The notes under the pieces: generated by a model
Told to the model about the DNA's origin: nothing
What the model saw: the letters and a program-made list of their open reading frames with translations, nothing else
Database searches by the model: none
In this document: positions 4,768-49,147 of the stretch, piece after piece
Layout of the letters: every line of letters begins with the position of its first letter
Position numbering within the stretch: position 1 is the first letter of the stretch
Translations under genes and position numbers: made by a program
Origin: Macrostomum lignano
Taxonomy: Eukaryota
Reading direction: 5' to 3'
NCBI GenBank assembly: GCA_002269645.1
Contig: NIVC01000225.1
Coordinates: forward strand, 124,001-188,000
Length of the DNA: 64,000 bases

Positions 4768-4989
4768 CCGTCCCCGCGCAGGCTTCTCTTCGTCTGTCCG
4801 CGTCTTCCTTTACGGGAAATCTCTTCTAATTCCGCCGGAGCCTGTTTCTGAGCTTGCTAAAAAACGGTTTTTTTAACTGGCTTTCTAATAGCCGCTGATT
4901 TCTCTCATAATTTTCCGCATTTCTTTATCTGCTGAATTTATGTGAGTACACTTCACTTTACTATAACCGAACTTTTAATCAATCAATAA

Positions 4990-5362
4990 GTCAGTCAGTC
5001 AGTCAGTCAGTCAGTCAGTCAGTCAGTCAGTCAGTCAGCCAGTCAGTCAGTCAGTCAGTCAGTCAGTCAGTCAGTCAGTCAGTCAGCCAGTCAGTCAGTC
5101 AGTCAGTCAGTCAGTCAGTCAGTCAGTCAGTCAGTCAGTCAGTCAGTCAGTCAGTCAGTCAGCCAGTCAGTCAGTCAGTCAGTCAGTCAGTCAGTCAGTC
5201 AGTCAGTCAGCCAGTCAGTCAGTCAGTCAGTCAGTCAGTCAGTCAGTCAGTCAGTCAGCCAGTCAGTCAGTCAGTCAGTCAGTCAGCCAGCCAGTCAGTC
5301 AGTCAGTCAGTCAGTCAGTCAGTCAGTCAGCCAGTCAGTCAGTCAGTCAGTCAGTCAGTCAG
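4990..5362. repeat. (CAGT)n tetranucleotide microsatellite, about 90 units with occasional CAGC variants
   Basis: Directly visible. It lies between a GTGAGT donor-like site at 4942 and the SHMT acceptor at 5523, so it is probably in a 5' UTR intron. Confidence 0.97.
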
Positions 5363-5534
5363 ACTCTGCTGCAAGAGCTGCTCGTGAATGAGTGAATCAA
5401 CAGCGGATTTACTGAGGCCCGGCAGTCCCAGATAGTCCTGTTAATCACCCATTGGGCACGCGCTCCTTCTTAAAGCCCTGCAAGTCAATTCTACCTTGAC
5501 CGCCACCGCTTTTCACTGCACAGAAGCCTGGGAG

Positions 5535-18900: not shown

Positions 18901-20179
18901 CCCCAATCCCTTCTCAAAAACAGGGAGTGATTGCATGTTTTGGCCATAGATATAGCCAATAGCTATCTTAAACTAGTAGATAGAGACATAAAATATATAT
19001 ACTACCACATCTTAAACTTGCACAAGTTAAATATTTACTTGTAGTAACTAAGGTAAGGAAGTTCTTTTTATTAAATATTTAAATGTGAAAATTTAGAAGA
19101 TTGCCAAATTTTCTTTCATACATAATGGATTAGGGAGTGGGGCTTGGTATATATTGTTGCATATCATAGTATGATCAATGCACTTAGTATTTATAGATTA
19201 GTTATAAATCAATTTTAAGTATAACAATTCATACGTGCCCAACACCTATCCAACCTGTCCAAACTAGATGGGTGAAATGGCCACTGGCCAAGGTAAGTTG
19301 CAAATTTTAAAATGCAAAAAACAAAAAATTGGGAGAAGAAAAAAGGAAAGGAAGAGAAAAAGAAAAGAAAGGAGGGAGAAAAGAGAGAGAGGGGAAAGAG
19401 AAAAGGGAAAAAGGCAATAAAAGTAATATACAAAGTGAAAATTAAGTTGCAATTGGGGGAACTAAGTCGCAATCAGGAGAAACTAAGTCGCAAAGCTGGA
19501 CAAAACACTAAGTTGCACCTGACGGGTGAAAATTTGAGGTTGGGCATATATGTAATAATTGAATATAATGGGCCTATATATTAGGCCTTGGTTGAATGTG
19601 AATTTTAGGTCATGTGTGATTCAATTTTTTTCTGTCATGATAGTATATGATTTGTGGTTGTGATTTTTAATTTTTATGTTCCATTAAAACTAAAAAACAC
19701 TTTCCTTCTAAAGAAAATCATATATACTACTGTTATAATTATAATGTTTAGAATTTGTTTGTTTGTTTAGAGTCATTCAATCTTAAAAACAGTTTCTAAT
19801 GAGTTTTTTGGCACAAGAAATATTATTTAATATATATTATAAATATAGAAGTTTTAAAATAAGTAGTATGTAGTTTAATTCATTTTGTTTATCTTGATCT
19901 CATAACTTTTTGGCATAGATATAGATTTCTCAAAGCCACTTTTTATCCTAGTATACACTTGAAATCTTTAAGACTATGGCAAAAAGGAGAGAGCAAGGTT
20001 AATTTATCCCTTTGGTAAACCTAGGTTAAAGGTATAAGGGAGACCAAGCAACCTTTTGGCGATACCCTGTGACAAATATCTGGTCCGAGAGTTTGCATGC
20101 TGACGGGCTGCTATTCAAGTAGTGATTGAAAACATAGTTAGTGGAGACCAATAACTGATAGAGCCAATTATTCTATTAT

Positions 20180-20788
20180 GGATTACTGTCGCCAAGGTCA
20201 GCTCTGGCTCCATAAGCAGTCGCTCCCTGATGTGGTTGCTAAGCACTTTCTCGACGAGCTGGTCACGCAGCATCTCCTCCTGGAAGGTCTTGAAGTCGCA
20301 GTTCGAAGTCAGGTTTCGTAGCGCGGCAACGAAGTCGCTGATCTTCTCGCCCGGTCGCTGAGCTCTCTGTTGGAATCTGTGCCTCTCAGCAACTACGTTG
20401 ACCTTAGGTCCGAAGTGCGTGTCCAGGAGCTTCAGCGTGTCATCGACTGTTGCTGGCGGATGCTCTTCTTCCTCTTGATTGCGGCTGGCCTGCAGAGACA
20501 TGTAGATGTTTTTTCCCTCTGCACCCAAGCAGTGGATGAGCAACGCTTGTTTTCTTAGCTCCAGCAGATCGATGGCTCCCGATGCTAGCAGGTAATTGCT
20601 GAACATTGCTTTCCATCGGTTCCATTCAATCAGCGGTGCTCCAGCGGCTGGCAGAAACGGCTGCGGTGGCGATATGTTGAGACTCATTCTGTTGGCTGTA
20701 TCTCTGCTTGACTGTTGGGCTGCTGCTTGTTGGGACCCTCGCTGTGGGTCGCCAATCGCACTTGCATTTGTGCCTTCTGTGCTGCTCA
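20180..20788 (-). mobile_element. Truncated Ty3/gypsy-type gag ORF
   Basis: WNRWKAMFSNYLLASG..RKQALLIHCLG..HFGPKVNVVAERHRFQQRAQRPGEKISDFVAALRNLTSNCDF..EMLRDQLV is typical retrotransposon gag. It breaks off after EPELTLATV, with no pol or LTR seen. Confidence 0.8.
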
Positions 20789-20945
20789 TGACTTGGCAGA
20801 TTTGAGTTCGCGCTTTTGCTGAGTCACGCTGGCCCAAATCAATTGATTTCTCCGTGCGACGCCTAAATGTAGTGAGCGAGAGACAAGCCAGTCAGGTTGA
20901 GCAAGGTATAATTGTACTTTTTGCCCATCCTTTCAGCTTTAAGCG

Positions 20946-23900
20946 ATGTCTGACCTGCCAGACACCTTCGACTACATTGTCTGGGGCGCCGGCCTGTCTG
21001 AGTGCATCCTGTCCGCCGCCCTCACCAGGGCTGGGCACTCTGTACTGCACCTGGACAGCTGGCAGCAGTACGGCGGTGCCTGGCAGTCGCCGACTCTGCG
21101 TGATCTCGAGTCTCAGCTGGCAGAGGTCGCGCCCGGCGCCCGCCTGGCCTGGGCTCAGCCGGCCGAGGCCGATGCCTGGCGATCGAGGTCGCGCTATTTC
21201 TGCCTGGACCTGAGTCCGCGTCTCTGCTTCTGCCGGGGCGACACCGTGTCCGCGCTGCTGCAGTCTGACGTGTCCCGCTACCTGGAGTTCCTGCCGGTGT
21301 CCGGGCTGTACACTGTCGACGAGGCCGGCTGTCTGGAGCGGGCGCCGGTACAGCGCGGGCAGCTGTTCCGCAGCGACAGGTACCTGCTAGTTAGCTAGTG
21401 CTCAGTGGACCCGTGTCTCAGTGCTCAGTGGACCCATGTCTCAGTGCTGAGTGGACCCGTGTCTCAGTGCTCAGTGGACCCGTGTCTCAGTGCTCAGTGG
21501 ACCCATGTCTCAGTGCTCAGTGGACCCGTGTCTCAGTGCTCAGTGGACCCATGTCTCAGTGCTCAGTGGACCCATGTCTCAGTGCTCAGTGGACCCGTGT
21601 CTCAGTGCTCAGTGGACCCGTGTCTCAGTGCTCAGTGGACCCATGTCTCAGTGCTCAGTGGACCCATGTCTCAGTGCTCAGTGGACCCATGTCTCAGTGC
21701 TCAGTGGACCCGTGTCTCAGTGCTCAGTGGACCCGTGTCTCAGTGCTCAGTGGACCCATGTCTCAGTGCTCAGTGGACCCATGTCTCAGTGCTCAGTGGA
21801 CCCGTGTCTCAGTGCTCAGTGGACCCATGTCTCAGTGCTCAGTGGACCCGTGTCTCAGTTCTCAGTAGACTCATGTCTCAGTGCTCAGTGGACCCATGTC
21901 TCAGTGCTCAGTGGACCCATGTCTCAGTGCTCAGTGGACCCATGTCTCAGTGCTCAGTGGACCCATGTCTCAGTGCTCAGTGGACCCATGTCTCAGTTCT
22001 CAGTGGACCCATGTCTCAGTGCTCAGTGGACCCATGTCTCAGTTCTCAGTAGACCCATGTCTCAATGCTCAGTGGACCCATGTCTCAGTGCTCAGTAGAC
22101 CCATGTCTCAGTGCTCAGTGGACCCATGTCTCAGTGCTCAGTAGACCCATGTCTCAGTGCTCAGTGGACCCATGTCTCAGTGCTCAGTAGACCCATGTCT
22201 CAGTGCTCAGTTGACCTTATGCAAGCAAGAGCCCTGCATTCTGTGTAATCCGCAACTCCGCCCCATCGCCAACTCCAGATTCTCGCTTGTGGAGAAGCTG
22301 CACTGCGGCCGCTTCGCCGAATTCTGCGTCTCCTGCCAGCCGGACCGGGACCTGGCGGACGCGGGCAGCTTCCCAGAGCTGCTGGCCCGTCACGGCCTCC
22401 GCTCTGGCCCGGCCCAGCGTCTCTTCGCCCTCGCCGTCGGCATGTCGCCTCCGGACTCACCAGCCGAGACCGTCGTGGCCGGCATTCGCCGATTCCTCGC
22501 CTCCTGCGGCGCCTACGGGCCCTCGCCTCTGCTGGTGCCGAAGTACGGCGCCTCCGAGATCTGCCAGGCCTTCAGCCGGCACGCCGCCGTCTGGGGCGCC
22601 GTCTTCCACCTGGGCGCCGATCCGGACAGGCCACCGGCCGAGGCCCGGCGCCGCCTCATCGTCAGCGACCGCTTTGCCCAGTCTGGCTGGCTCGACCTCG
22701 GCCGGAAGCGCCGCCTGTTCAGGCAGATTCTGGTCACCGACGGGTGCGTCTGCTGGTGCTGAGGCCCTTCCCGATCCTTCCGGGCACCTCTGCTGCCCTC
22801 TCTCCGATCCTTCAGGGCACCTCTGCTGCCCTCTCCGATCCTTCAGGACACCTCTGCTGCCCTCTCCGATCCTTCAGGGCACCTCTGCTGCCCTTCCCGA
22901 TCCTTCCGGGCACCTCTGCTGCCCTCTCCGATCCTTCCGGGCACCTCTGCTGCCCTTCCCGATCCTTCAGGGCACCTCTGCTGCCCTCTCCGATCCTTCG
23001 GGCACCTCTGCTGCCCTTCCCGATCCTTCAGGGCACCTCTGCTGCCCTCTCCGATCCTTCAGGGCACCTCTGCTGCCCTTCCCGATCCTTCAGGGCACCC
23101 TGACTTACCCTGCCCTCGGCCAGCAGCTGTGCCTTCTATTCAATTTGACTGATATTGATGTCACGTGATGTCGCCATGCTTTACACCTATCCGCTCGCAG
23201 TTCCTGGGCGCCCCGGTCGGAGGACCAGCAGGACGCTGACGAAGTCCGTCTAGCCGTCTGCATGCTGCCCGGCTTCACTCGGCCGCTTCTGGCGATGGAG
23301 CTGCCGCCCGAGACTGGCTGCTGCCCGACTGGCACCCGTGTTGTCCACCTGCTGCAGCCCTGCAGCCCGGGAGAGTCGCCGCCCACCGACTGCGTGCAGT
23401 GCGCGCTGGCGCCCTTCACCGACCTGCGGTTTGAGCGGCTGCCCCCCTGCTGCCAGTGCGCGTCTGAGCCGACCGCCGCGAATCTACCAACTGAGACTGC
23501 TTTGGATAAGAATCTGGGGCAGAGTGACTCAACAGGTCAACCGGCCGACTCAGCGGGTCAACCAGCCGACTCAGCGGGTCAACCAGCCGACTCAGTGGGT
23601 CAACGAGCTGACTCTATGAGTCAAACGGCCGACTCAGTGAGTCAACCAGACGACTCAGTGGGTCAACTGGCCGACTCAGCGAGACAACCAGACGACTCAG
23701 TGGGTCAACCGGCCGACTCAGCAAGTCAACCAGCCAACTCAACGGGTCAACCGGCCGACTCAGCGATTCAGCCAGCCGACTCAGCGAGTCAATCAGCCGA
23801 CTCAGCGGAACAACCAGCCGACTCATCGGGTCAACCGGCCGACTCAGCGGGTCAACCGGCCGACTCAGCAGATCAACCGGCAGCAGCCGCCGATGACCAG

Positions 23901-24281
23901 CAGCCATTCCGCAAGCCCAGCTGCATTCTGTCGGTCTGCTTTGTCCAGGACGACCTGAGCGACTGCCTGAACCCCGGCGCCCTGCCGGACAATGTGACAG
24001 TCGTTCCGAGCCTCTATTCGGACTTCGACTTCGACGTGGCTTTCCAGCGGGCCAAGGAGCTGTTCGACGAGCTCTGCCCCGGCCAGGAGTTCCTGCCGCG
24101 GCCGCCGGACCAGGAGGACCTGGTGTTCGATCAGCCCGCCTCCGAGGCGCCGACAGTCAACGGCGACTGTGGCGAGGGCGAGAACGAGGGCGCGGCGGAG
24201 GCAGCCCCGCCTGCGACGCCTGCTGCCGAGGTAACCCCCAACGGCGACTCCAGCGAAAGCCAGCCTGAGAACGCGCGCTGA
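20946..24281 (+). CDS. CHM: Rab escort protein (REP/choroideremia, GDI family), about 659 aa, 3 exons
   Basis: Exons 20946-21379, 22279-22743 and 23201-24281, phases consistent. Motifs: FDYIVWGAGLSECILSAAL..G.SVLHLD...YGG.W, FCLDLSPRL, LLQSDVSRYLEF, SPLLVPKYGASEICQAFSR.AAVWGAVF. The REP-specific C-terminus AKELFDELCPGQEFLPRPPDQEDLVFD separates it from GDI. Confidence 0.92.
21397..22211. repeat. 23-bp minisatellite (GTGCTCAGTGGACCCATGTCTCA)n in CHM intron 1
   Basis: About 35 tandem units between the donor at 21380 and the acceptor at 22278. Confidence 0.96.
22764..23100. repeat. 31-bp minisatellite (GGGCACCTCTGCTGCCCTCTCCGATCCTTCA)n in CHM intron 2
   Basis: Tandem array between the donor at 22744 and the acceptor at 23200. 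Confidence 0.95.
23520..23880 (+). repeat. 21-bp coding minisatellite (GGTCAACCGGCCGACTCAGCG)n encoding (GQPADSA)n inside CHM exon 3
   Basis: About 17 units. The frame stays open from the upstream REP motif (RVVHLL) to the downstream motif (ILSVCF). Confidence 0.9.
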
Positions 24282-24540
24282 TTGTCATCGAGTTAATGCG
24301 AACAAATCATTGTACTAATGAGCCAATTATTCTGTAATATTAGCATCCATTTTCTCTATCCAGCCTTTGCAATTGTCGAATGCTTATATTGATATGTACT
24401 GGTTGGTGATTGGGCTGGAGTCCTGGCGCACAGTCGTGATAATCAATGATTTTGCTATTCAGACTTATTTATGATGCCTTCGATTTCAGATCTATTCGGA
24501 CTCGAGATGGCTTGTGAGCTAATTATTTTGAAAATGTATT

Positions 24541-24546
24541 AATAAA
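24541..24546 (+). terminator. Polyadenylation signal AATAAA of CHM
   Basis: Canonical hexamer about 260 nt after the stop, followed by a U-rich stretch. Confidence 0.6.
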
Positions 24547-24635
24547 ACCAAATGCGTCGGTCTGTCTTTATTTGCGCTATCGGATTCCATCATTTCTGAT
24601 TTGCTTGCTATGGGAGCTGTGGAGACTTTGGTTGT

Positions 24636-25372
24636 GAATCTCCCTGCTTTGGATCAGTGAATCTCCTTGCTTTGGATCAGCGAATCTCCTTGCTTTGGAT
24701 CAGTGAATCTCCTTGCTTTGGATCAGTGAATCTCCTTGCTTTGGATCAGTGAATCTCCTTGCTTTGGATCAGCGAGTCTCCTTGCTTTGGATCAGTGAAT
24801 CTCCTTGCTTTGGATCAGTGAATCTCCTTGCTTTGGATCAGTGAATCTCCTTGCTTTGGATCAGTGAATCTCCTTGCTTTGGAGCAGCGAATCTCCTTGC
24901 TTTGGATCAGTGAATCTCCTTGCTTTGGATCAGTGAGTCTCCTTGCTTTGGATCAGTGAGTCTCCTTGCTTTGGATCAGCGAATGTCCTTGCTTTGGATC
25001 AGTGAGTCTCCTTGCTTTGGATCAGTGAGTCTCCTTGCTTTGGATCAGCGAGTCTCCTTGCTTTGGATCAGTGAGTCTCCTTGCTTTGAATCAGTGAGTC
25101 TCCTTGCTTTGGATCAGTGAATCTCCTTGCTTTGGATCAGTGAATCTCCTTGCTTTGAATCAGTGAGTCTCCTTGCTTTGGATCAGCGAATCTCCTTGCT
25201 TTGGATCAGTGAGTCTCCTTGCTTTGGATCAGCGAATCTCCTTGCTTTGGATCAGCGAATGTCCTTCTTTGGATCAGTGAGTCTCCTTGCTTTGGATCAG
25301 CGAATGTCCTTGTTTTGGATCAGCGAGTCTCCTTGCTTTGGATCAGCGAGTCTCCTTGCTTTGGATCAGTCA
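24636..25372. repeat. 23-bp minisatellite (TCTCCTTGCTTTGGATCAGTGAA)n between CHM and GSTCD
   Basis: Tandem array filling most of the intergenic spacer. Confidence 0.96.
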
Positions 25373-25485
25373 GCCAATTGCTATGCTAGTAGTGCAAGAA
25401 ACAGTTTTCAAAGAACAAAATTGGTTGCAAGGTTAAAAAGGGCCGACCTCATTTTTCACCTGCTGCGAGCCACCGCCAGAGCCGC

Positions 25486-27927
25486 ATGGCAACTGCGTCA
25501 TTGGCAACGTCGCTAACCTCCGTGGTTGCCATGGCGACACCCGGCGGCAGCAATGCGGAGTCTGCAGAGCGGCTGCTAGCCAAACTGAGCCTGGAGACTC
25601 CCGAGCAGCCCGATAGTTCCACTGCAGCACCACCACCAGTCGCTAAGGACGCCGATTCGGTTCCTACGGACGCCGATTTGGTTCCTACGGACGCCGCTGT
25701 GCCGCTCGATCTCTACCTGGAATCTGACGAGTCCGGCCGCGCCCTGACTCTGCAGTCCAAAGCGGCGCTACTGATGGCGCTGTACCCGGAGCCCCGGCCC
25801 TGCCGAGTCCACCTGACTGGCGGCTCTGCTGATGAGGCTGAGGAGAAGCTGGCTGGCGAAGTCGTGCTCGTCCACGGCGGTGCCCGCAACCCCGGCACGG
25901 AGCTGCCGGCCCTGGCCTGTCCGGCCGTGCTGTACGCCGGCCTGCCTTCCGTTGTACGCGCCCTGGCAGAGCGGGGCGGCGCCGTCTGTCAGGCGCTGCT
26001 GGGGCCGCACAGCGTCTGCCTAAAGGCCTGCAAGGAGCGGTCGCGGTGGACCCGCCTATGCGAGCTGACCTGTCCCGGCCAGCTGGGCACCTGGGCGCTG
26101 CCGGGCTCCGACGATGCGCAGCCGCCCGCCTGCCTGGCGGACCTGGAGCTGGCGTTGGAGCGGCCGCGCTACAAGCCGAGGCCTTTTCTGGAGGGCAAGC
26201 GGCCTACTCTGGTGAGAATTCTGGAGTTATTTCCTACTCAAAGTAGTAAAGTACTCGTAGTTCAACGGTATCGCATCTGTCTCGTGCTGGAGTCGTTCTG
26301 GAGACCAAACCTCAAGGCTCAGAGTTGAAGCCTGCGTACGGATTGCTCGCATGCTCAGGGGCAGCCGCGCAGGGTATACAGCGGCCCTGACTTTATCACC
26401 GTCAGTTATGCTGCATCAGTCCCCTACTTTATTCTCCATTATCACCTTTGTCTTCGGGGGCCGTAGCCCAGTGGTCCAGCGAAAGTCGCGCGAGTTACCA
26501 CTAAGAACCACTGAGTAGTCCTTGGTGGTTACCGCTGAGCTCCTCTGCCTCTCGTTCTCTGTATTGCGCTCAATAAGCGGTGTCAATTAAAATTTCCCAA
26601 AACTGTCCAATCCTAGGTGGACATTCTCATTGTCTGCTACTTGCGCGACGTTGCCCGCAAGGCCAACCGGCCGCCGCTGCCGCTGGGGCATCGAACCGCG
26701 GACCTGCTGGCCAGACTGAGCGCCGATCCGGCCTTCGCCGCCGCCGCCGCCGTAACCGACAAGTTCGAAACCGAGTACCGACCGGCCGCCGGGGACGCGC
26801 CGCGGCTCACCGACAAGCGGGCTCAGGTTGGGGTTTGCGTACTCGAATGCTTTTAAACATGCGTTTAAATTTTATGCACCAATATTTTTGCAGACTAATT
26901 CGCTTCAAAGGATAGTGCTATCGCTACTAGTTAGTAGGCTGTAATGTGCATATAAAGTCGACAATTTTCAAAATTGGTGCATTTGTGAGGAAATCCTTTT
27001 TATAAAAATTCTTACATTTTTTCCGCATCTTTAGCATACCCAGATCGCCTACTGAAAAGTAGCAAGTAAAGAATGTGAAACTAATCTCTTATGGCGTGTA
27101 CCTCTCACATGTATTGTTTCTTAACCCCCGAAACCCCACAGGTGCCCGGTCTGTGCACCGAGTCGCTGCGCCAGCTGCTGGACCGCCTGGAGCCGGCCGT
27201 GTCGCTGCCCTGGCAGCCGGAGGCCGAGGCTTCCCCGCTGCCGCCCCTGCCCGACTGGCTGGCCGCCGAGGTGCCGCCGGAGCGGGCGGCTCGCAAGCGG
27301 CAGCAGCTGGCCAGCCTGGCCGCTGACGTCCTGCCGTTGGCCCGGCCCGGTCACGTGATCGTAGACTTCTGCAGCGGCTCCGGTTACCTGGGCCTCCTGC
27401 TGGCGCACCTGCTGCCGCAGTGCCGCATCGTGCTGGTGGAGAACAAGCTCGAGTCCCTGCAGTTCGCTCTGGACCGGCTGGGCCAGCTCGGGCTCCCCAA
27501 CGTGCGCATCGTGCAGAGCAACCTCTGCAACTTCCGGGCCGCCTTCGACATCGGCGTTGCCCTGCACGCCTGCGGCTCCGCCTCCGACCTGGTGCTGGAG
27601 GCCTGCGTCCGCGCCCGCGCCGCCTGCGTGCTGTCGCCCTGCTGCCACGGCGCCACCAAGCCCGGCCCGGGCCTCGCCTATCCGCGCAGCTCCGCCGCCT
27701 CGGCAGCCGGCCTGGCCAGCCTGGAGCACGCGCAGCTGTGCCACGCCGCTGACCGAATCACCGGCCGGCAGTCCCGCCAGCTCTTGGCTAAGCGGGCCCT
27801 GCGGCTGCTGGACAGCGACCGGGCCCTGGCCATGCGGGAGGCCGGCTACGGCCGGGTGCGGCTGGCTCTGATGCGGCCGGACACCTGCTCGCCTAAGAAC
27901 TCAATCCTGGTGGCCTGTCCGAGCTGA
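25486..27927 (+). CDS. GSTCD: Glutathione S-transferase C-terminal domain-containing protein with class I SAM methyltransferase domain, about 573 aa, 3 exons
   Basis: Exons 25486-26211, 26617-26826 and 27142-27927, all phase 0. RAARKRQQL..L...ARPGHVIVDFCSGSGYLGLLLAHLLPQC.IVLVENK, FDIGVALHACG.ASDLV, SPCC.G and CSPKNSILV match GSTCD closely. Confidence 0.93.
26456..26560 (+). mobile_element. Possible tRNA-derived SINE head fragment in GSTCD intron 1
   Basis: GGGGCCGTAGCCCAGTGGT contains a Pol III A box. There is no B box or cloverleaf, so it is not a tRNA. Confidence 0.3.
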
Positions 27928-28289
27928 GGTCCCGCCTGCTGCCAGCCGGGATCAGGGCACCATTAGACATAGAAAAGTGCAGAGTTGAATTTTTTGTTTT
28001 AAAATGTGCTGCGTATCGGGCACCGTGCCAAATGATTGTCTGCTGTAGTCATTGGGTTTTGCATAACAAGTTCTGGTCTGCAACACATTCAACTGTTCCC
28101 AGCTGTTTTAACTTTGACTTTGGATTACATTGGCGATTCTGCGACATATTTGTTTCAATAGATTTGCTGCTCACGCTGCACTTCATGTGTACTTTGCTTG
28201 TTTTGATAATCATTTTCAAAGTTGCTGCCTTTTTACAGTAGTACACGGTGCGGTAGACAGATGCGCAATAGCTAGATCTATTTAGTAGG

Positions 28290-28620
28290 TAGATGCGCAC
28301 TAGGTAGATCTATTCTTTATATAGATGCATAGTTGGTAAATCTTTTTCTTAGATAGATGCGTGGTAGGTAGATCTATTCAATAGATAGATGCACAGTGGG
28401 TAAATCTGTTCAGTAGATAGATTCACAGTGGGTAGATCTGTTCAGTAGATAGATTCACAGTGGGTAGATCTGTTCAGTAGATAGATTCACAGTGGGTAGA
28501 TCTGTTCAGTAGATAGATTCACAGTGGGTAGATCTGTTCAGTAGATAGATTCACAGTGGGTAGATCTGTTCAGTAGATAGATTCACAGTGGGTAGATCTA
28601 TTCAGTAGATAGATGTGCAG
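28290..28620. repeat. 32-bp minisatellite (TAGATAGATTCACAGTGGGTAGATCTGTTCAG)n upstream of the TMEM126 coding exon
   Basis: Tandem array with degenerate units at its 5' side. Confidence 0.92.
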
Positions 28621-28701
28621 TGGATAGACAGATTGAATTGCACTGCTGAACTACCTGACGTTCTGCTGGCGTCGGCACCTGACCGGACGGCGACCGCGCA
28701 G

Positions 28702-29978
28702 CGGCAAAACATTCAAGGCTCCCCTGGCTACGTGGTGTACTACCACCACAGCCAGCGGGGCTCCCTGCCGCCCGGCGCGGTGCCGCTGAACCCCCAAGAG
28801 GTGCTGGATCGTCGACACCACGCGGCAAATGCCTGGCGGCCCCGCGAGCAGGTCTGGTCGCTGCCGCTGCACGACTACGTCTGCACCTACCCCACCCTGG
28901 TCAGCTCCGCCCTCATCGCCGGCAACCACCGGCTGATGCTGAGCCTGGGCGTGGCCAGGATGTCCTACTCGATGGCCTGCTGCATTTTCCCGACTTACAT
29001 GCAGGTCTGCGGCTCGTGCTGATCCCCGAGACTCTGCCCGTCTTCCAGTGACCCCTGCCACTCTGCCCGTCACCCAGTGACCCCTGCCACTCTGCCCGTC
29101 ACCCAGTGACCCCTGCCACTCTTCCCGTCACTTAGTGACCTGCCACTGTCCGTCACCCAGTGACCCCTGCCACTCTGCCCGTCACCCAGTGACCCCTGCC
29201 ACTCTGCCCGTCACCCAGTCACCCCTGCCACTCTTCCCGTCACTTAGTGACCTGCCACTGTCCGTCACCCAGTGACCCCTGCCACTCTGCCCGTCACCCA
29301 GTGACCCCTGCCACTCTGCCCGTCACCCAGTGACCCCTGCCACTCTGCCCGTCACCCAGTCACCCCTGCCACTCTTCCCGTCACTTAGTGACCTGCCACT
29401 GTCCGTCACCCAGTGACCCCTGCCACTCTTCCCATCACCCAGTGACCCCTGCCACTGCCCGTCTCCCAGTGACCCCTGCCACTCTGCTCGTCACTTTTGT
29501 CACTCAACGGCACGGCACAGCACCTGACTCCAACGAATTGAGTCTCCATCCCCATCAACCCCAACCCGACCAGGTGATGGCGTCCAAGCAGATGCTGCTG
29601 AACAGCCTGCTGACGAACCCAATCCAGTGCCCGCCCTGCGTGATGCTGCGTGGCGCCGGCCTCGGCCTGGCCTTCGGCATCCTGATGCCCTACGTGTACA
29701 GCTTCTTCCTGCACTCCACTGCCGCGCGCATTCTGCAATCCGCGCCGGTGCCCGCGAACCTGACCGACTGGCGCCAGCAGTTTGCGCTGTTGCGCCGCCT
29801 GGTCACCGGGGAGAAGCGCCTGCTAGCCGTGCTGGCGCCCGCGGTGTCCATCTACGGCGCGTGGCTGGCCGACCGGATGCGGCGGCACAGCATCTTCCTG
29901 AACGACGCCAGCAGGCGGGCTCTGCAAGACCTGCCAAATCAGCGGGGCGGCGGCTCGCAGGCGGAGGAGGCGGGCTGA
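28702..29978 (+). CDS. TMEM126: TMEM126-family (DUF1370) mitochondrial inner-membrane protein, 2 main exons, 5' end lacks a genomic ATG
   Basis: Exon ending 29004 (CAG|GTCTGC) joins in phase 0 to exon 29574-29978. NSLLTNPIQCPPCVMLRGAGLGLAFGILMP...LHSTAARILQSAPVP matches the TMEM126 PL.TGDL.CxxC...R.GL.GL..G..YP...LAARYQS..LP region recalled from the family. The 5' boundary is uncertain (28632 or 28702). Confidence 0.78.
29025..29480. repeat. 29-bp minisatellite (CAGTGACCCCTGCCACTCTGCCCGTCACC)n in the TMEM126 intron
   Basis: Tandem array with a recurring variant unit. Each unit contains a GTGAC..GTCAC inverted pair. Confidence 0.93.
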
Positions 29979-30000: not shown

Positions 30001-30006
30001 AATAAA
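30001..30006 (+). terminator. Polyadenylation signal AATAAA of TMEM126
   Basis: Canonical hexamer about 20 nt after the stop. A second one lies near 30076. Confidence 0.55.
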
Positions 30007-30831
30007 GATGAATTGCTAATCTGAGCCGGTTATTGCTGTCTTGCGGGAATGTCATCCCTTCTGAAAATGAGTTGCAATAAAATGCATTTGAATGAGATGG
30101 AGTCAATGACAGGTTGCGCAAAACAAAAATAACCGCTCAGAACGGAACTCAGTGCATTTTATTTCTTCCTCCATTGGCTGGGGGGCTTCAAAGACAATCT
30201 TGCTCGATGCACACCAGCCGGCTGCCGATGGCGCCTCGGGCTTCCCCCTCCCCCCAGGGCGCAGCATTTGTTCCCCATTAGTTTGTATTCTATTTTAGCG
30301 TTGAACCTTGATTTTAGGTTTTGTTCTGTTAGAAGTGCGCTGGAATCAAGTTACGTCACAAAGGTCAACTCCAAAGTCCACTGGGTATTAAGAGGCTATA
30401 CAACGCATTTTAATACCAGTGGTCATTGGTCAGCTATTTGTGTCGGCTGCAGTAGTTTCATAGTTCATAGTAGCTTCATCTACTTTCTTATTGTGCATGC
30501 CAGCTCAGCCTGTGTTGCAAAATCATTTTGTTTCTGGCCGGTGCGTGCCGGCAAACAGAGCTGCTGCTTTGTCGGCTTTGATCAGATTTTTGCCGTTTAG
30601 CCATTAATAAACTTGTTACTGTTGTCTTCTTGAGTTGCCTTCATCTGAGGCTGCGTTCGAGTAGCTTAAAATGGCCTATGGTGACTTAAAATGACTTGTA
30701 ATAATTATTTTACGTGTCTTTTGGCGTACTCCGTAATACAAAACTACTGACAATAATTTAGATAACAAACTCCGCATGTGTTTGTAACCAGCATTTTGGA
30801 GACAATAAAGAGCTGTTTAAATATTTTAGGC

Positions 30832-33568: not shown

Positions 33569-38645
<5,077 letters not shown>

Positions 38646-40186: not shown

Positions 40187-40816
40187 TCAGGAGTCGCGCG
40201 AGCTCCTGGCCGCAGCGGAGTCGCGGTCCGCGATCACGTAGGTGAGGGCGATGGGGTCCCGCCAGTCGGCCTGGCCGTCCGTCTCCCTGCAGCGCAGTTT
40301 CTGCAGCTCGGCGAGGCTCCAGTAGGCCGGCAGGCGGGTGTTGCGCCTGTAGATATCCACCGTGCCGGTGGCGGACAGGCGGTGCTGGTCGCAGAGGAAG
40401 CCGGCGACGTGGCCGATGGTGGCCTGCATTGCCAGCAGCAGGAAGATCTGGCGCTGGCCTCCGCGCGGGCTCAGCGCGATCTGCACCGGAGTGGCCAGCT
40501 CCAGCGGCAGCGACTTCTCCAGCTCCAGGCTGAAGTCCAGCCGGCGATGCACCTCGCTGGCCCGCAGGCCGGGCACCAGCTTGTACACCAGGTCCTGCAG
40601 CACCCGGTCCTGGCGCAGACAGCCCTCCTCCTCCAGCTTGAGCTCCTGGCCGCACTCCGGACAGCGGCTTGGCCGGACAGTCTGCAGGTGGCCGACAATA
40701 CAAGACTTGCAGAACACGTGGAAACAGTCGGTGAGGCGGGTGGCGTCAATCAGGTAGCCAGCGCAGAGGCTACACACTAGGATGTTGTTGAGCTGCCTGA
40801 GCTGCGGCCTGCCAGA
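40187..40816 (-). CDS. PCGF: Polycomb group RING finger protein (PCGF/BMI1 family; C3HC4 RING plus RAWUL-like C-terminus), single genomic coding exon without an ATG
   Basis: SGRPQLRQLNNILVCSLCAGYLIDATRLTDCFHVFCKSCIV...RCPECG...QDRVLQDLVYKLVPGL contains the PCGF signature D+.LQD+VYKLVPGL. The exon starts at acceptor CCTCAATCCCGCAG with a CTGAC branch motif upstream. Subfamily not resolved. Confidence 0.9.
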   Translation of the reverse strand, partial: SGRPQLRQLNNILVCSLCAGYLIDATRLTDCFHVFCKSCIVGHLQTVRPSRCPECGQELKLEEEGCLRQDRVLQDLVYKLVPGLRASEVHRRLDFSLELEKSLPLELATPVQIALSPRGGQRQIFLLLAMQATIGHVAGFLCDQHRLSATGTVDIYRRNTRLPAYWSLAELQKLRCRETDGQADWRDPIALTYVIADRDSAAARSSRDS

Positions 40817-43800
40817 CTGCGGGATTGAGGTGAGCAGTCAGCACTCAGCTTGAGCAGTCAGTCTGGGCACGACATTAAAGCTGCTAATCTAGATGACGTA
40901 GTGACTTCAATTGGAATATATAGAAGCATTATAAAATAATTAAAAATTCTTTGTAAGGCTGAGGTCATACACCTGAACACATAAATAAAAGACCTCTAAA
41001 GCAATGCTATATGGTTTTTGGTGCTCGATTAGTTTGTCCATTTTTTAAATGTTTCTAAAAAATGGAACTGCCCGAGGACGCGCGGCGTTATTAAAGACAG
41101 ACGCCTATGTTTTCGTATGTCTATGTCCGAAACCCATAGAATTGAAAAGAGGGACGCAAAAGCGAGAGAAGACACAGCATCAAAGGAGTTCTAACTGACG
41201 CGTTTATCACGTACTGGACATGAACCTGGGGTAAAGTGGAAGTGGTCCTACAACTGCCAGTCTGTCTTCTGCTAAACAAGGGACTCCTAAAATAGCATTA
41301 GAGTGCTAGCTCTAGAAGTCCCTGGCTAAGCCCTGATTTACCCTAAAAGTTATTCTATAAGCTGTGCTACTTGTTTGGCATTACGAGGCCATAGTCAATG
41401 AATTCCAAATATATAAACAACTTCAGTGTCACTGGGGTGAGTTTGGGCCATAGACAGCTTGCAAAAGTAGTCCCTGCAGCAGGTTTGTAGAGCTACAGAA
41501 TCAGAGAGCAACCAGCTAAGCCAAAATGGAGTTCGCCTTGGCTTTGGTGGGTGCCAGCAGCACAAGTGTATATCAGGTGTTGCAGACCCATGGACCAACT
41601 GCAGGGAATCAGTGAGATGTTTGCAAATATGGTAATTCCAAGTTCTGCAAGATATTGATTGCCATTTGACATGCAAAGAGATGGCTAGTACTCTCTTTTA
41701 AGTGTACATCCTCATTCAAGATCTTGGACTTGGGAATGTCACAGCCAGCCCTGGCAGAAGCACCCACAGAGTATGTCACTGGGTCTTATTCATGATGTAT
41801 GACAATACCAGTTTATACACTGCCATAGGACTATTAGTAGAAAATGCTGCCTTTTTTCACCAAATTCCTCTGACAAGGATAGTTGTATTTGAAAATAATT
41901 GTGCAATTAATTATATAACTCACAATCATATATCCAGAAACTATCATTTCAAACCATTGGGAATATATAATTCAAGCCAATCAATTTAATTAACTAAAGT
42001 AGCATTCATTTTATAATATTTCTAGCATTGCAAATATGTTCTAAGAATTATCTATTAGGCCTAACTTTGATATCTAAATAAATATAGATATGACAAGTGA
42101 TAACAAAATTAAAAACAAAATATTAGCAAGATTAGGCAGTAGGTTGAATGATTAAGACTAAAAATGCAACTGTTATTTAATATCTTGTTTTTTGCTATAC
42201 TAAAACATTCTGCCTTAAATAATACATTTGTACTTTTATAATGTTATGTTTCTAAAAAGAGTATTGACTTATATTTATAACTATGGCTATGTTATTGACA
42301 AAATTTTATATTTAAGGCTCCTTCTTTAAGCTAGTGATAATTGGCATAGGTGCACTCCCAGGGGGAAGAAGGGATAGTCACCTCTTTTAGCAAAGACCTA
42401 AACAGAAAATAAAATAAAAGGAAAGATTAAACAAGTGAATTTTTATAAAAATATAGTCTAGGTAGAGCCATTCTATCTAGGTCTTTACTATCTAGAATTG
42501 CCATTCTTCAAAAAATTCAGGTTGCACCATTGATTTGGCAGATCAAATAGAAGGCAAGCCAAAACAAGAACCATGCCCCTGCCCTGCCCTGGCCCAATGC
42601 CAAGTGGCCAAGCCATATGATTATGAAAATAATTAATTGGTAAATTTATTGAAGAAATAACCCGTAATATAAGGTATAAGTTTTTGTGCAATCATTATAT
42701 AATTTACCCCTAGCCTAAAAATTGCTGAAACTGGGCTAAAACCTATATGGCTTGCCCTGTTGGTTAAAAAGTAAATATTTTTTATAAAACTTGTACTGTA
42801 GCAGTCTAGTAGTAGTGTCAATGTGCTAAATCAGAGTGGTTGGTGGTTGTTGCACATAATGTAAAAAAATAGCAATTCTTTGTTTGAAACTGGAAATGAT
42901 TAATCAAGTATGCATCGTTGACTCTTTAGATTCGACTTGATTGCAGCTGCATAACATAAATAACCACTGACGATTGATCCATGCAGTTTTTGACTAATAT
43001 TACATATCGGATTTAATTTCTGTGATCTTTGATTCTAGGAATTTTACGGGCTTATGCCTGTAAAAATATGTATTAATATAGCTAGAAATTGTGTATTTAT
43101 TATTGTTCACTGTTACAGTTTATTTCGTCACACTTCCGAATTGATTCTCAAAATCTCAATAAAAAATCTTCTTGGCTTGCTATGGGCAAACTAGGTCGCA
43201 GTTTTGGCAAAATTGATTGCAGTTTTCAAAGAGTTGTCTGTGGCTGAAACTTGTCATGACTGAGCAGACTTGGCCTAGACAGCAAAATTATAAGTGATAT
43301 TTTTCCGCGGGCAAAATTGATTGCAGTTTTGGCAAACTAGATCGCAAAAAGGTATATTTATATATGTCTAGCTCGTATATACTTAACTACATTCGAATTT
43401 GCGCATACTTGGTCTTTTGTTGAATTTTGAATGGAAAGTCTGGCTTCTACATGTACATGTATGAGCATTAGTATGTTTTAAGATTAAATGAACCGCATGC
43501 TTTGCATTCAATTGCTTCATACCTGTACATCCGCGCCTGTCCCCACTGGTTCACACGACCTCGAAACGACATCGAATCAAGCAGTATACCTCGATTTGAC
43601 TATATTCTGGTTTTTCCAACAATTTGTTTATATAAACCATCCCCGTGGTGTCGAATGTATTAAAAAACATAGATTTTTTAAAAATTAAAATGAAAAAGTA
43701 TGACGTAATGACATCGTATCCATGCCGTAAAGTAGGACCTCGTTTGTACGATAAAACTTCGATAAGAAGTTGATAGTTCAAATTTTTGACAACAAAAAAC

Positions 43801-47184: not shown

Positions 47185-49147
47185 ATGGCTTCTAGACAAA
47201 CAGCAAATCGCTACATCCGTGAATATCTGTTGACTCTGATGTCAGCAGACAGCACTGCTAATTGTGTAGAGGATGAGAGTTTGTCTGAAGTTTCTGCTTC
47301 ATTTCAACTTTCTGAAGCTGAAGAGTTTGCGAATCCGCACGTGTGGAAAGACCTGGCTCCAGATGCTGGTGAAGACAATTCGGAAATCCCATATTGCTAC
47401 TCGCACGAAAGTAGTGGTGAATCTTCTGATACAAGCGATGACGAGTCAGGTTCTGCAACAAGCAATCCGCAAACAAGCCGCCCTTCGCTGCCGGCGAAGC
47501 TTCTGACTTTCATGCTGATATTTTCTGTTAGCAAAAGAGCTATGCAACACCTTTTAGTAATTCTGAACGAGGAGGGTTGCAATGTACCGAAGTCGGTCAG
47601 CACTTTGAAACGCTATTGTCAACCTATTTCACATGACCTTTTATCTGTCGCATGTGGTGGCCAATTCGCCTACTTCGGTATTATGAACAATATTCGTTTT
47701 TGCTTCGAACGCCAGCTTTTAAAGCTCAATGATCACTTCCAGAAGTTGACAATATTAGTCAACTTTGATGGGGTTCCCGTGTACAAGAGCTCGAAAATGT
47801 GTCTATGGCCCATTTTGCTTGCCATTAAAGGTGTTGATTTATCTGTCCCTTTACCAATCGGAGTTTTTTGCGGCATCAACAGGCCACCATTGAGTACGTA
47901 TCTTGAGAGTTTTGCTCAAGAGTTGCGCTCTTTAATGGAAACTTACGTTTCCATTGCTAATAAAGCTATAAAAATCGAACGCTGCATTATTATTGCTGAC
48001 GCACCTGCCCGTGCGTTCATTCAAGGAATTTACAGCCATTCGGCTAGACTCGCATGTGGATATTGCAAAATTGAAGGCTCTCGTATTGAAAACCGTATGT
48101 GCTTTCCTTATAATCAATATGAGCCACGTACCAACGACGCTTACATGTCCATGCGTGAAAGTAACCAACTTGTATCTTCTCCATTACTCGGCATTGTCAA
48201 TTTCGTGGAAGATCTCCCCCTGAATACATGCATTCGGTGTGTCTAGGTGTTGTGAAGCGTTTGTTTTCTTTATATGTTTCTTCTATTAAGGGTATTAAGT
48301 TACCGTGCCGATTGTCTGCTGTTCAGAGAATTCATCTTTCGCAGCTAATGATTCAAGTTTCTAAGTGCTTGCCCCGTGAGTTTCACAGAAAGCTCAGAAG
48401 CCTCGACGAATTCGAGCACTTCAAGGCGTGTGAGTTTAGGACTTTAATTGTGTACCTTGCTCCCGTTTTGTTTCGTAAGTTTCTACCAGCTCCTTATTTT
48501 GACCACCTGATGCTATTGCATGTAGCAATCTTTTGCTTTGTTTCACAAGAGCTTTCTACTTCTCTGTTTCATCAAGCATCTTCTTGTATTACACTTTTTT
48601 GCCAGAGAGCTCCAGGATTATACAAAGGTGCTCTGCAATCTTTTAATGCGCATCTGTTATCCCACATGCCTCATTTTGTAGAATCACTCGGTCCATTGGA
48701 TCAGTGGTCTGCATTTTTTTCGAAAACTACAACGGAGTTTTGAAGCGTCGCTTAAGGTGCACATCAAATATTTTCATGCACACCATAAATACTATGTCTC
48801 ACATTCGAAACGCTTTTGTTACTACTACTTCTCGCCCGCTATACTTTTCCTGCGCGTCGCCGGACAATTGTTGTATTACTCAATGTGGTCATGTACTTGC
48901 TATTTCAGCTCTATCTATCGAGTATGGGCGCACAAAAGTTATTGGTAAAATTATTCAATTTGTTAGAGACATGTACTCTTTTCCATATAGCTCTTCATCA
49001 ATAGGCATTGGTATATATAAACTGACAAACAATAGCGTTTATGATGCCACGGCAAAGTCCAAATGTATTCTGATACCACGTGAGAGCAATGAGTATTTCG
49101 TTATTCCTCTCGCCAATCCTGATTTGGCTCTCTTTTCGCCATCCTAA
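47185..49147 (+). CDS. CMC/EnSpm-type DDE transposase (about 654 aa if two single-base homopolymer deletions are corrected)
   Basis: LVNFDGVPVYKSSKMCLWPILLAI, IIADAPARAFIQG..SHS..ACGYC, (P)EYMHSVCLGVVKRL, FKACEFRT...Y, H.LSH.PHFV..LGPL..WSAF.FENYNG.LKR. Frameshifts at the C5 run 48216-48220 and the T7 run 48714-48720. Confidence 0.85.

What the first reader, a model, noticed from the sequence alone, without database searches (positions are those of the whole stretch)
28225..29004. TMEM126 also lacks a genomic ATG; possible SL-AUG plus micro-exon
Seen: the frame open from 28615 has no ATG until 28936, which is inside the conserved first hydrophobic segment. A strong acceptor (GCCTTTTTACAG-TAG, 28238/28241) is followed by TACACG|GTGCGG or TACACGGTGCG|GTAGAC, and the 32-bp minisatellite starts shortly after, as it does inside other introns here. 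With an SL AUG at 28242, a 6-nt micro-exon joined to acceptor 28701 (phase 0) gives MYT-RQNIQGSPGY. An 11-nt micro-exon joined to acceptor 28631 (phase 2) gives MYTVRLNCTAELPD. Direct trans-splicing at 28701 gives MRQNIQG. Using the first AG (28238) instead gives AUG-UAG, so NAGNAG choice would act as an on/off switch. These models are inference.
Basis: partly seen in the sequence, partly recalled or inferred. Interest (0 to 1): 0.7.

Follow-up and report, generated by a model that had tools for sequence, protein, structure and literature searches.

The report
TMEM126 gene lacking its own start codon
An ordinary-looking TMEM126 (mitochondrial membrane protein) gene has no usable ATG in the genome, so its start codon most likely comes from the AUG at the end of a trans-spliced leader RNA, a mechanism already known in flatworms; the more elaborate micro-exon and on/off-switch ideas are not supported.

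Summary
This is a two-exon TMEM126 orthologue (about 28702-29004 and 29574-29978). Its reading frame opens at 28609. The first in-frame ATG is 28936, which lies 56 residues after the family's invariant Pro and also after the conserved Ala, Trp and Arg, so it cannot be the native start.

Codon usage changes from non-coding-like to coding-like at the phase-0 acceptor GCGCAG|CGG (AG 28700-28701). A start there leaves 23 residues before the invariant Pro. In 22 homologues this stretch is 9-53 residues, median 19.5.

A second gene in the window, a BMI1/PCGF-like RING gene on the minus strand, shows the same anatomy.

The best reading is direct trans-splicing of an AUG-terminated spliced leader to 28701, giving MRQNIQGSPGY... 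(236 aa). The gene is probably the downstream member of a three-gene operon.

This is inference. The source organism is absent from the databases and I saw no transcripts. A Macrostomum-like flatworm fits, but that was not shown.

The 11-nt micro-exon model is disfavoured. The 6-nt micro-exon and the NAGNAG switch have no specific support.

The mechanism is known (Cheng et al. 2006), so interest is modest.

The parts
27141..27927 (+). Last exon and stop codon (TGA 27925-27927) of the upstream same-strand gene, a Methyltransf_32 (GSTCD-like) methyltransferase. Its exons are 25486-26211, 26618-26826 and 27141-27927.
   Evidence: Pfam PF13679, E = 1e-11. Exon borders read from the sequence.
28157..28205 (+). 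Putative 3'-end signals of the upstream gene: the AATAGA hexamer variant (28157-28162) and a GU/U-rich stretch TGTGTACTTTGCTTGTTTTG (28186-28205). There is no canonical AATAAA in 27928-28252.
   Evidence: Coordinates verified. Function is inferred from general knowledge of poly(A) signals and was not tested.
28229..28241 (+). T-rich tandem acceptor CTTTTTACAG|TAG| (AGs ending at 28238 and 28241). It is the only match to the published M. lignano trans-acceptor motif [T/C]TNCAG in 27900-28760.
   Evidence: motif from PMC8629364. Chance expectation is about one motif per 325 bp. The T-run version has P about 0.05.
28242..28252 (+).
   Evidence: The sequence is present. There is no evidence that it is used. 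GTAGAC is the start of repeat unit 1.
28253..28628 (+). 32-bp minisatellite, 11.8 copies. It lies either in the outron/intercistronic spacer (favoured) or in a 5' intron.
   Evidence: TRF; printed in register.
28679..28683 (+). CTGAC branch-point-like motif. Its A (28682) is 19 nt upstream of the G of the AG at 28701.
   Evidence: The PCGF-like gene has an analogous CTGAC 21 nt before its acceptor. Weak evidence.
28700..28701 (+). Phase-0 acceptor AG (GACCGCGCAG|CGG). This is the favoured junction with the spliced leader, so that the SL's terminal AUG becomes codon 1.
   Evidence: Phase. Codon-usage change point: the 31 codons upstream score -3.1 and the 31 downstream score +18.7. N-terminal length fits homologues.
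28702..29004 (+). TMEM126 coding exon 1 (RQNIQGSPGY...PTYMQ). It holds the family's invariant Pro and Arg and near-invariant Ala and Trp.
28829..28936 (+). The first genomic ATG downstream of the acceptor is out of frame (28829). Its 35-codon ORF ends in TGA 28934-28936, which overlaps the in-frame ATG (TGATG).
28936..28938 (+). First in-frame genomic ATG (ORF residue 108). It lies 56 residues after the invariant Pro and after the invariant Arg106.
29005..29573 (+). Phase-0 intron 1 (GTCTGC...CCAG), filled by a 29-bp minisatellite at 29031-29494.
   Evidence: The exon junction aligns without a gap to homologues.
29574..29978 (+). TMEM126 coding exon 2, including the stop TGA 29976-29978. AATAAA signals follow at 30001-30006 and 30076-30081.
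40190..40837 (-). Second gene without a genomic start: a BMI1/PCGF-like RING-finger exon. Its phase-0 acceptor is AATCCCGCAG|TCT (AG at 40818-40817, exon from 40816). An SL AUG would give MSGRPQLRQLNNILVCSLC.
   Evidence: ORF residue 9 aligns to BMI-1 residue 5. The first in-frame Met is about residue 136.

Best explanation
This is a functional two-exon TMEM126 orthologue whose initiator codon is not encoded at the locus. It lies about 0.4 kb (after subtracting the repeat) behind a same-strand methyltransferase gene, which itself follows a Rab-escort/GDI gene. It is most likely the downstream member of a polycistronic unit.

In the proposed mechanism, the pre-mRNA is resolved by spliced-leader trans-splicing. 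The leader ends in AUG, as in all flatworm leaders reported in the papers read here; the Macrostomum lignano leader ends ...TTGCATG. It is joined directly to the phase-0 acceptor GCGCAG|CGG (AG 28700-28701). The intergenic spacer, including the 32-bp minisatellite, is discarded as outron. The leader's AUG becomes codon 1 of a 236-residue protein, M-RQNIQGSPGYVVYYHHSQRGSLPPGAV....

Shown here:
- the gene's identity;
- the absence of a usable genomic ATG;
- the phase of the acceptor;
- the codon-usage change point at the acceptor;
- the fit of the N-terminal length to homologues;
- a second gene in the window with the same anatomy.

Inferred: that the organism is a flatworm with an AUG-terminated leader, that this mRNA is trans-spliced, and which AG is used.
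For: 1. In-frame ATG 28936 lies after invariant P52 and R106 and near-invariant A55 and W74 of the family alignment. It therefore cannot be the native start.
2. No other in-frame ATG exists from 28609 on. The first ATG a scanning ribosome would meet after 28701 is out of frame, at 28829.
3. Leave-one-out codon-usage LLR for 31-codon windows is 19.9 +/- 11.1 in true coding sequence and -21.4 +/- 9.1 off frame. The window 28609-28701 scores -3.1 (3.6th percentile of coding). The window 28702-28794 scores +18.7.
4. A start at 28701 leaves 23 residues before the invariant Pro. Twenty-two homologues have 9-53 (median 19.5), and the two closest have 26 and 19. The 236-aa length compares with a median of 228.5.
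5. The BMI1/PCGF-like gene at 40816 (minus strand) also lacks a genomic ATG. A phase-0 GCAG acceptor places an SL-Met within two residues of BMI-1 Met1.
6. The second-best TMEM126 hit is from the flatworm Trichobilharzia. Exon and intron sizes and GC-rich exons fit published M. lignano figures.
7. Literature:
   - The M. lignano SL ends in ATG. About 30-39% of its genes are trans-spliced and 15% are in operons, with repeat-adjusted spacers under 1 kb.
   - The flatworm SL AUG is used as initiator, and is required for a subset of conserved genes.
8. Repeat-adjusted spacers here are about 468 bp (Rab-escort/GDI gene to methyltransferase gene) and about 398 bp (methyltransferase gene to 28701).
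Against: - No transcript, SL read or SL RNA gene was seen. The M. lignano SL is not in the window and Rfam finds nothing.
- The source organism could not be identified. It is absent from the protein collections.
- The 28701 acceptor does not match the [T/C]TNCAG trans-acceptor motif, whereas 28238 does. The motif is reported at only 44% of M. lignano SL sites.
- One of four control genes (the methyltransferase) also has a poor codon score over its first 31 codons (-5.6), so the change-point argument is not absolute.
- Any Gln, Lys or Glu codon ending in AG gives a phase-0 AG, so being in frame is weak evidence on its own.
- 125 formal models with a genomic ATG and a GT...AG intron exist.
Confidence: 0.5

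Rival explanations
1. The leader is trans-spliced to the T-rich acceptor at 28241. A 6-nt exon (TACACG) is then cis-spliced from GT 28248 to acceptor 28701, removing the minisatellite as an intron. The product is M-YT-RQNIQG.... Use of AG 28238 instead would give AUG-UAG.
For: - TTTTTACAG matches the M. lignano trans-acceptor motif perfectly, and it is the only match in the spacer.
- It lies about 55 nt after a plausible AATAGA plus GU-rich 3'-end signal of the upstream gene. That is the classical operon spacing (about 100 bp).
- GTGCGG has G at +5, like 6 of 7 verified donors in the window.
- Flatworm cis and trans splicing share acceptors.
- It uses the same acceptor, 28701, that the coding signal favours.
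Against: - The motif is expected about once by chance in the spacer. The T-run version has P about 0.05.
- A 6-nt exon between a 3' and a 5' splice site is sterically unfavourable (established knowledge on minimal exon size; not tested here).
- The repeat array starts 5 nt after this donor, whereas in four verified introns it starts 19-61 nt after the donor.
- With two AGs, several GTs and acceptors in all three phases, an in-frame solution was guaranteed.
- Minisatellites also sit in an intergenic spacer here (24634-25370).
Confidence: 0.08
2. The gene is conventional. A short upstream exon with its own genomic ATG, somewhere in 27930-28400, is cis-spliced to 28701 or another acceptor. The best candidate is ATG 28032 (A at -3), ATGATT|GTCTGC joined to 28701, giving M-I-RQNIQG....
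For: - 125 frame-compatible models exist.
- The 28038 donor hexamer GTCTGC is identical to the verified intron-1 donor at 29005.
- The SHMT gene in this window shows the same architecture: a 5' exon, a repeat-filled intron, then an acceptor just before the coding sequence.
Against: - None of the candidate donors matches GT[G/A]AG.
- All candidate first exons lie in AT-rich, non-coding-like sequence within about 100-300 bp of the upstream gene's stop codon. That leaves no room for that gene's 3' UTR plus a promoter.
- Finding one acceptable-looking combination among 125 is expected by chance.
- This model does not explain the second ATG-less gene.
Confidence: 0.15
3. The leader AUG is used but with a longer N-terminus. 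Either there is direct trans-splicing to the in-frame AGs at 28608 or 28620 (M-IDVQWIDRLNC... or M-WIDRLNC...), or the reader's 11-nt micro-exon is joined to 28631 (MYTVR-LNCTAELPD...).
For: - The frame is open from 28609, and both 28608 and 28620 are phase 0.
- GC content, and GC3 in this frame, rise from about 28660.
Against: - The extra 27-31 codons score as non-coding (-3.1).
- The N-terminal stretch of about 50 residues exceeds 21 of 22 homologues, and the total length of about 263 aa exceeds all 22.
- The acceptors are part of the last repeat unit.
- GTAGAC, the donor of the 11-nt model, is the repeat-unit start and lacks G at +5.
Confidence: 0.07
4. No AUG is supplied at all. Translation starts at a near-cognate codon (for example CTG 28663 or 28666), or at ATG 28936 to give a truncated protein. 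Alternatively this copy is a decaying duplicate, or the assembly is wrong at the repeat.
For: - In-frame CTG, GTG and ACG codons exist upstream.
- The out-of-frame ORF starting at 28829 ends in TGATG, overlapping ATG 28936, which would allow termination-reinitiation.
- M. lignano-type genomes carry many duplicated genes.
Against: - Both exons are intact, strongly codon-biased, and keep every invariant or near-invariant family residue.
- A start at 28936 deletes four of those residues.
- Non-AUG initiation of a housekeeping gene is rare (general knowledge).
- The same 'defect' in an unrelated conserved gene 12 kb away argues for a shared mechanism rather than decay.
Confidence: 0.08

Closest known systems
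[quoted passage not shown]
   Same: A conserved ORF has no in-frame genomic AUG before its conserved N-terminus. A phase-0 acceptor sits where orthologues begin, so an AUG-terminated leader would restore a full-length protein.
   Different: Here nothing was observed at the RNA level. The organism is unidentified and no SL gene is in the window. TMEM126 is not among the examples I could read. The flatworm relative Trichobilharzia has a genomic ATG in its gene model.
Macrostomum lignano SL trans-splicing and operons (Ustyantsev and Berezikov 2021, PMC8629364; Wudarski et al. 2017, PMC5730564)
   Same: - Three same-strand genes with repeat-adjusted spacers under 1 kb.
- Repeats inside the spacers.
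- GC-rich exons of about 300-800 bp and introns of about 0.6-0.8 kb.
- A leader ending in ATG would fit both ATG-less genes.
   Different: The favoured acceptor (GCGCAG) lacks the enriched [T/C]TNCAG motif. Species identity is inferred, not shown.
slORFs: reading frames created by leader-borne start codons (slORFfinder, PMC9851317)
   Same: The start codon would be contributed by the leader rather than by the gene.
   Different: Many slORFs described in nematodes, Oikopleura and trypanosomes differ from the annotated ORFs in frame or in length. Here the leader AUG would be the only way to make the canonical, conserved protein.
TMEM126A / TMEM126B (Pfam PF07114), mitochondrial inner-membrane proteins of animals
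   Same: - The Pfam match is above the gathering score.
- The P-x-G-A, W-x-P, R and C-x-x-C positions are conserved.
- There are several hydrophobic segments.
- Length is about 230 aa.
   Different: Identity to the nearest relatives found is only 29-31%. Function was not tested.
NAGNAG tandem acceptors (own knowledge; for example Hiller et al. 2004)
   Same: CAGTAG at 28236-28241 has the sequence form.
   Different: Known NAGNAG sites add or remove one codon inside coding exons. A role as a translational switch next to a leader AUG is undocumented and untested.

Membership tests
TMEM126 (PF07114) | Profile match above Pfam's gathering score | tested here: met
   28.0 bits against a cut-off of 25, E = 1.6e-6, profile positions 44-134 of 181.
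TMEM126 (PF07114) | Sequence-search hits to named family members and conservation of family-invariant residues | tested here: met
   31 phmmer hits, best E = 1.4e-12. They include 'transmembrane protein 126' (Tachypleus) and 'TMEM126A' (Sepia). P52, R106, C149 and C152 are invariant; A55, W74, P126, P169 and P190 are near-invariant.
TMEM126 (PF07114) | Multi-pass membrane protein of about 200-250 aa | tested here: met
   The 236-aa model has hydrophobic stretches at model residues about 80-97, 122-150 and 184-202, plus a weaker one at 63-76. Homologues are 211-258 aa.
SL-AUG-initiated flatworm mRNA | The organism has an SL RNA whose exon ends in AUG | not testable with these tools
   There is no SL gene in the window. 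The organism is absent from the collections. Flatworm affinity is only suggested.
SL-AUG-initiated flatworm mRNA | mRNA carries the leader joined at an acceptor in frame with the ORF | not testable with these tools
   No transcript data were reachable. Only the genomic phase could be checked: AG 28701 is phase 0.
SL-AUG-initiated flatworm mRNA | No in-frame genomic AUG that could give the conserved N-terminus | tested here: met
   The frame runs 28609-28935 without an ATG. ATG 28936 lies after four conserved family positions.
SL-AUG-initiated flatworm mRNA | The leader-Met N-terminus corresponds to those of orthologues | tested here: met
   23 residues before the invariant Pro, against 9-53 (median 19.5) in homologues. 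For the PCGF-like gene, the leader-Met falls within 2 residues of BMI-1 Met1.
Downstream gene of an SL-resolved operon (M. lignano criterion) | Same-strand upstream neighbour at a repeat-adjusted distance under 1 kb | tested here: met
   From stop 27927 to AG 28701 is 774 bp. Subtracting the 376-bp minisatellite leaves about 398 bp. Criterion from PMC8629364.
Downstream gene of an SL-resolved operon (M. lignano criterion) | SL reads at the downstream gene's 5' end | not testable with these tools
   No RNA data.
   However, frame compatibility was guaranteed by the number of available sites.
   The acceptor has P about 0.05 by chance. The 11-nt variant is disfavoured by codon score and length. 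The 6-nt variant is neither supported nor excluded.

The most novel reading that the evidence does not exclude
The T-rich tandem acceptor, about 55 nt after the upstream gene's 3'-end signals, is the real leader-addition site. A 6-nt exon carries the leader AUG's frame across a minisatellite intron into 28702. The choice between the two AGs three bases apart (28238 or 28241) then decides between AUG-UAG (dead) and a productive TMEM126 mRNA. That would be a splice-site-level translational switch in an operon gene.
Probability: 0.04. Interest if true: 0.6.

Novelty: new member of a known kind. Interest (0 to 1): 0.25.

Why it matters
If confirmed, this locus and the BMI1/PCGF-like gene 12 kb away are clean examples of conserved genes that depend entirely on the leader's AUG. 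This has three practical consequences.

- Standard gene finders will mis-annotate such genes, either truncating them at the first internal Met or missing them.
- Operon and trans-splicing status becomes essential for their expression.
- Transgene or knock-in designs in such organisms must supply a start codon.

It adds no new mechanism. SL-donated initiator codons were demonstrated in flatworms in 2006.

Tried and rejected
- **Finding the organism or its transcripts.**
  - The search for homologous proteins with TMEM126 gave no hit.
  - An exact look-up of the upstream ORF found nothing.
  - The SHMT exon gave at most 77-78% identity.
  - I concluded that the source and its close relatives are absent from the collections, and gave up on Logan or ENA transcript contigs.
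- **Looking for an SL RNA gene.** Rfam found nothing. Searches with the M. lignano SL and with its donor junction, allowing 3 mismatches, also found nothing.
- **Literature and supplement look-ups** for TMEM126, PCGF, GSTCD or SHMT in Macrostomum papers returned nothing.
- **First codon-usage run.** It used some mis-framed training exons. I discarded it and redid the analysis.
- **A +1-frame codon-usage blip at 28634-28660** reaches at most 7.7 bits per 10 codons. It has no ATG and is closed by stops on both sides, so I treat it as noise.
- **Is the 28238 acceptor the degenerate left edge of the minisatellite?** In-register identity is about 28%, so I rejected this. Only GTAGAC at 28253 belongs to the repeat.
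- **Initiation at ATG 28936.** Rejected on conservation.
- **Pfam scan of ORFs in 54-64 kb and 1-4.4 kb.** It gave nothing useful for further examples.
Full report
**What is there**

The window is animal DNA with GC-rich exons (GC3 about 0.8-0.9), AT-rich spacers and introns filled with minisatellites.

Around the finding, three genes lie head to tail on the + strand:
- a Rab-escort/GDI gene, ATG at 20946, ending near 24281;
- a Methyltransf_32 (GSTCD-like) gene, exons 25486-26211, 26618-26826 and 27141-27927;
- the gene in question.

The gene in question has two coding exons, about 28702-29004 and 29574-29978. They are separated by a phase-0 intron (GTCTGC...CCAG) that holds a 29-bp minisatellite.

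It is a TMEM126 family member:
- Pfam PF07114 scores 28 bits against a cut-off of 25.
- An exhaustive phmmer search of 1.84 billion representatives gives 31 homologues, best E = 1.4e-12 at 29-31% identity.
- The hits include proteins named 'transmembrane protein 126' and 'TMEM126A', and a Trichobilharzia (flatworm) protein as second-best hit.

**Checking the observation**

Every coordinate statement reproduces.
- The frame opens at 28609, after TAG 28606-28608.
- The first in-frame ATG is 28936.
- CTTTTTACAG-TAG gives AGs ending at 28238 and 28241.
- GT dinucleotides follow at 28248 (GTGCGG) and 28253 (GTAGAC).
- The 32-bp minisatellite spans 28253-28628.

In the alignment of 22 homologues, P52, R106, C149 and C152 are invariant, and A55, W74 and others are nearly so (numbering from V1 = 28615). 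ATG 28936 is residue 108. A start there would delete P52, A55, W74 and R106, so it is not the native start.

The absence of Met over 109 codons is not remarkable in itself (P = 0.115). The real anomaly is the absence of any start before the conserved N-terminus.

**Where the coding sequence begins**

I trained a codon-usage log-likelihood ratio (in-frame against off-frame) on 1,526 codons of homology-supported exons from this window.
- Leave-one-out 31-codon windows score 19.9 +/- 11.1 in frame, with a 5th percentile of -1.0.
- Off-frame windows score -21.4 +/- 9.1.
- The 31 codons upstream of AG 28701 score -3.1, which is the 3.6th percentile of coding windows.
- The 31 codons downstream score +18.7.

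One caveat: the first 31 codons of the methyltransferase gene also score poorly (-5.6).

Homologues carry 9-53 residues before the invariant Pro (median 19.5; the two closest have 26 and 19). A start at 28701 gives 23. Models that start at 28608, 28620 or 28631 give about 50. Both lines of evidence place the start of the coding sequence at or very near the phase-0 acceptor GACCGCGCAG|CGG. A CTGAC branch-like motif lies 19 nt upstream of it.

**Where the AUG comes from**

From 28702 on, the first genomic ATG is out of frame (28829). Its ORF ends in TGATG, overlapping ATG 28936. An mRNA that begins near 28702 without an added AUG would therefore be unproductive.

I enumerated every genomic ATG in 27928-28700 combined with a GT donor and a frame-compatible AG. 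There are 125 formal models, and none has a GT[G/A]AG donor. The most presentable is ATG 28032, ATGATT|GTCTGC joined to 28701. It lies only about 100 bp after the upstream gene's stop codon, and finding one such case among 125 is expected by chance.

A second conserved gene in the window shows the same defect. The BMI1/PCGF-like RING exon on the minus strand (40837-40190) has no in-frame ATG before about residue 136. It has a phase-0 acceptor AATCCCGCAG|TCT, with the exon starting at 40816. A Met added there gives MSGRPQLRQLNNILVCSLC. Its residue 9 aligns to BMI-1 residue 5, so the added Met falls within two residues of BMI-1 Met1. Two unrelated conserved genes with the same anatomy argue for a shared mechanism that supplies the AUG.

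**The known mechanism that fits**

All flatworm spliced leaders reported in the papers I read end in AUG. That AUG can serve, and for some conserved genes must serve, as the initiator. This is Cheng et al. 2006, as cited and extended in PMC9851317, PMC12582326, PMC5832876 and PMC3510090.

In Macrostomum lignano:
- the leader is CGGTCTCTTACTGCGAAGACTCAATTTATTGCATG;
- 30-39% of genes are trans-spliced;
- 15% lie in operons with repeat-adjusted spacers under 1 kb;
- repeats commonly inflate those spacers.

Here the repeat-adjusted spacers are about 468 and about 398 bp. Exon and intron sizes and GC-rich exons match what is published for M. lignano. The nearest identifiable TMEM126 relative is from a flatworm.

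The species itself could not be established. It is missing from the searchable collections, and no SL gene lies in the window. The trans-splicing step is therefore inference.

- The upstream acceptor matches the M. lignano motif [T/C]TNCAG. That motif occurs 3.1 times per kb per strand, so one is expected in the spacer. The T-run version has P about 0.05.
- In its favour, it lies about 55 nt after a plausible AATAGA plus GU-rich 3'-end signal of the upstream gene (inference).
- GTAGAC at 28253 is merely the start of repeat unit 1.
- The repeat array starts 0-5 nt after the proposed donors, against 19-61 nt in four verified introns.
- The argument that minisatellites mark introns fails, because the spacer between the Rab-escort/GDI gene and the methyltransferase gene also contains one (24634-25370).
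- Acceptors exist in all three phases, so some in-frame micro-exon solution was inevitable.
- The 11-nt model is disfavoured by codon score and length.
- The 6-nt model uses the favoured acceptor and cannot be excluded, but it requires an unusually small exon.
- The NAGNAG on/off idea has no support beyond the presence of CAGTAG.

**Verdict**

| Reading | Probability |
|---|---|
| Direct trans-splicing of an AUG-terminated leader to AG 28701, giving a 236-aa TMEM126 that starts MRQNIQGSPGY | about 0.5 |
| Any leader-supplied AUG, all acceptor variants together | about 0.65 |
| A cis-spliced exon bearing a genomic ATG | about 0.15 |
| The 6-nt micro-exon variant | about 0.08 |
| Longer-N-terminus variants | about 0.07 |
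| Non-AUG start, truncation or decay of this copy | about 0.08 |

This would be a new example of a mechanism described in 2006. It is useful mainly as an annotation lesson, so interest is modest. Mapping leader-containing reads, or SL-primed 5' RACE, would settle it at once.

Noticed in passing
window 40190-40837 (minus strand), acceptor AG 40818-40817: A BMI1/PCGF-like RING-finger gene also lacks a genomic start codon. A phase-0 GCAG acceptor sits exactly where BMI-1's N-terminus begins, and an added Met would give MSGRPQLRQLNNILVCSLC. A CTGAC motif lies 21 nt upstream of the AG.
   Followed up: partly
window 20946-29978 (+ strand): Three same-strand genes (Rab-escort/GDI, Methyltransf_32/GSTCD-like, TMEM126) have short spacers, about 468 and 398 bp after subtracting minisatellites 24634-25370 and 28253-28628. 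This looks like an SL-resolved operon.
   Followed up: partly
window 28829-28938: An out-of-frame ATG at 28829 opens a 35-codon ORF. Its stop TGA (28934-28936) overlaps the first in-frame ATG (TGATG), a termination-reinitiation-like arrangement. It is probably coincidental.
   Followed up: no
window 4989-5362, 5882-7244, 21397-22216, 22764-23099, 29031-29494 and others: Nearly every intron examined carries a long micro- or minisatellite, with periods of 4 to 31 bp and up to 93 copies. In the four introns checked it starts 19-61 nt after the donor. The repeat units themselves contain splice-site-like AG and GT motifs.
   Followed up: partly
window 4758-5535: The SHMT gene has a TATAAAT box (about 4758), a non-coding 5' exon, a 5'-UTR intron filled with (AGTC)93, and a genomic ATG at 5535 twelve bases after the acceptor. 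It is a conventionally started gene, in contrast with TMEM126.
   Followed up: partly
window 20115-20837 (minus strand): An ORF with a PNMA (retroelement Gag-like) domain (E = 5.5e-7) lies directly upstream of the Rab-escort/GDI gene. It is probably a retrotransposon remnant.
   Followed up: no
window 20934-20948: The Rab-escort/GDI gene's ATG (20946) follows a motif-perfect acceptor CCTTTCAG|CTTTAAGCGATG. A leader AUG joined there would read AUG-CUU-UAA and stop 4 nt before the genomic AUG.
   Followed up: no
window 28634-28660: There is a weak codon-usage signal in the +1 frame (LLNYLTFCW, up to 7.7 bits per 10 codons) just upstream of the favoured acceptor. That frame has no ATG and is closed by stops on both sides, so I judged it to be noise.
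   Followed up: partly
window 33569-34003 and 38265-38642 (+ strand): A homeobox gene with a genomic ATG lies in a GC-rich region. The AT-rich blocks at 10-20 kb and 42-53 kb contain long ORFs (for example 47185-48246) with no clear family. These may be transposons.
   Followed up: no
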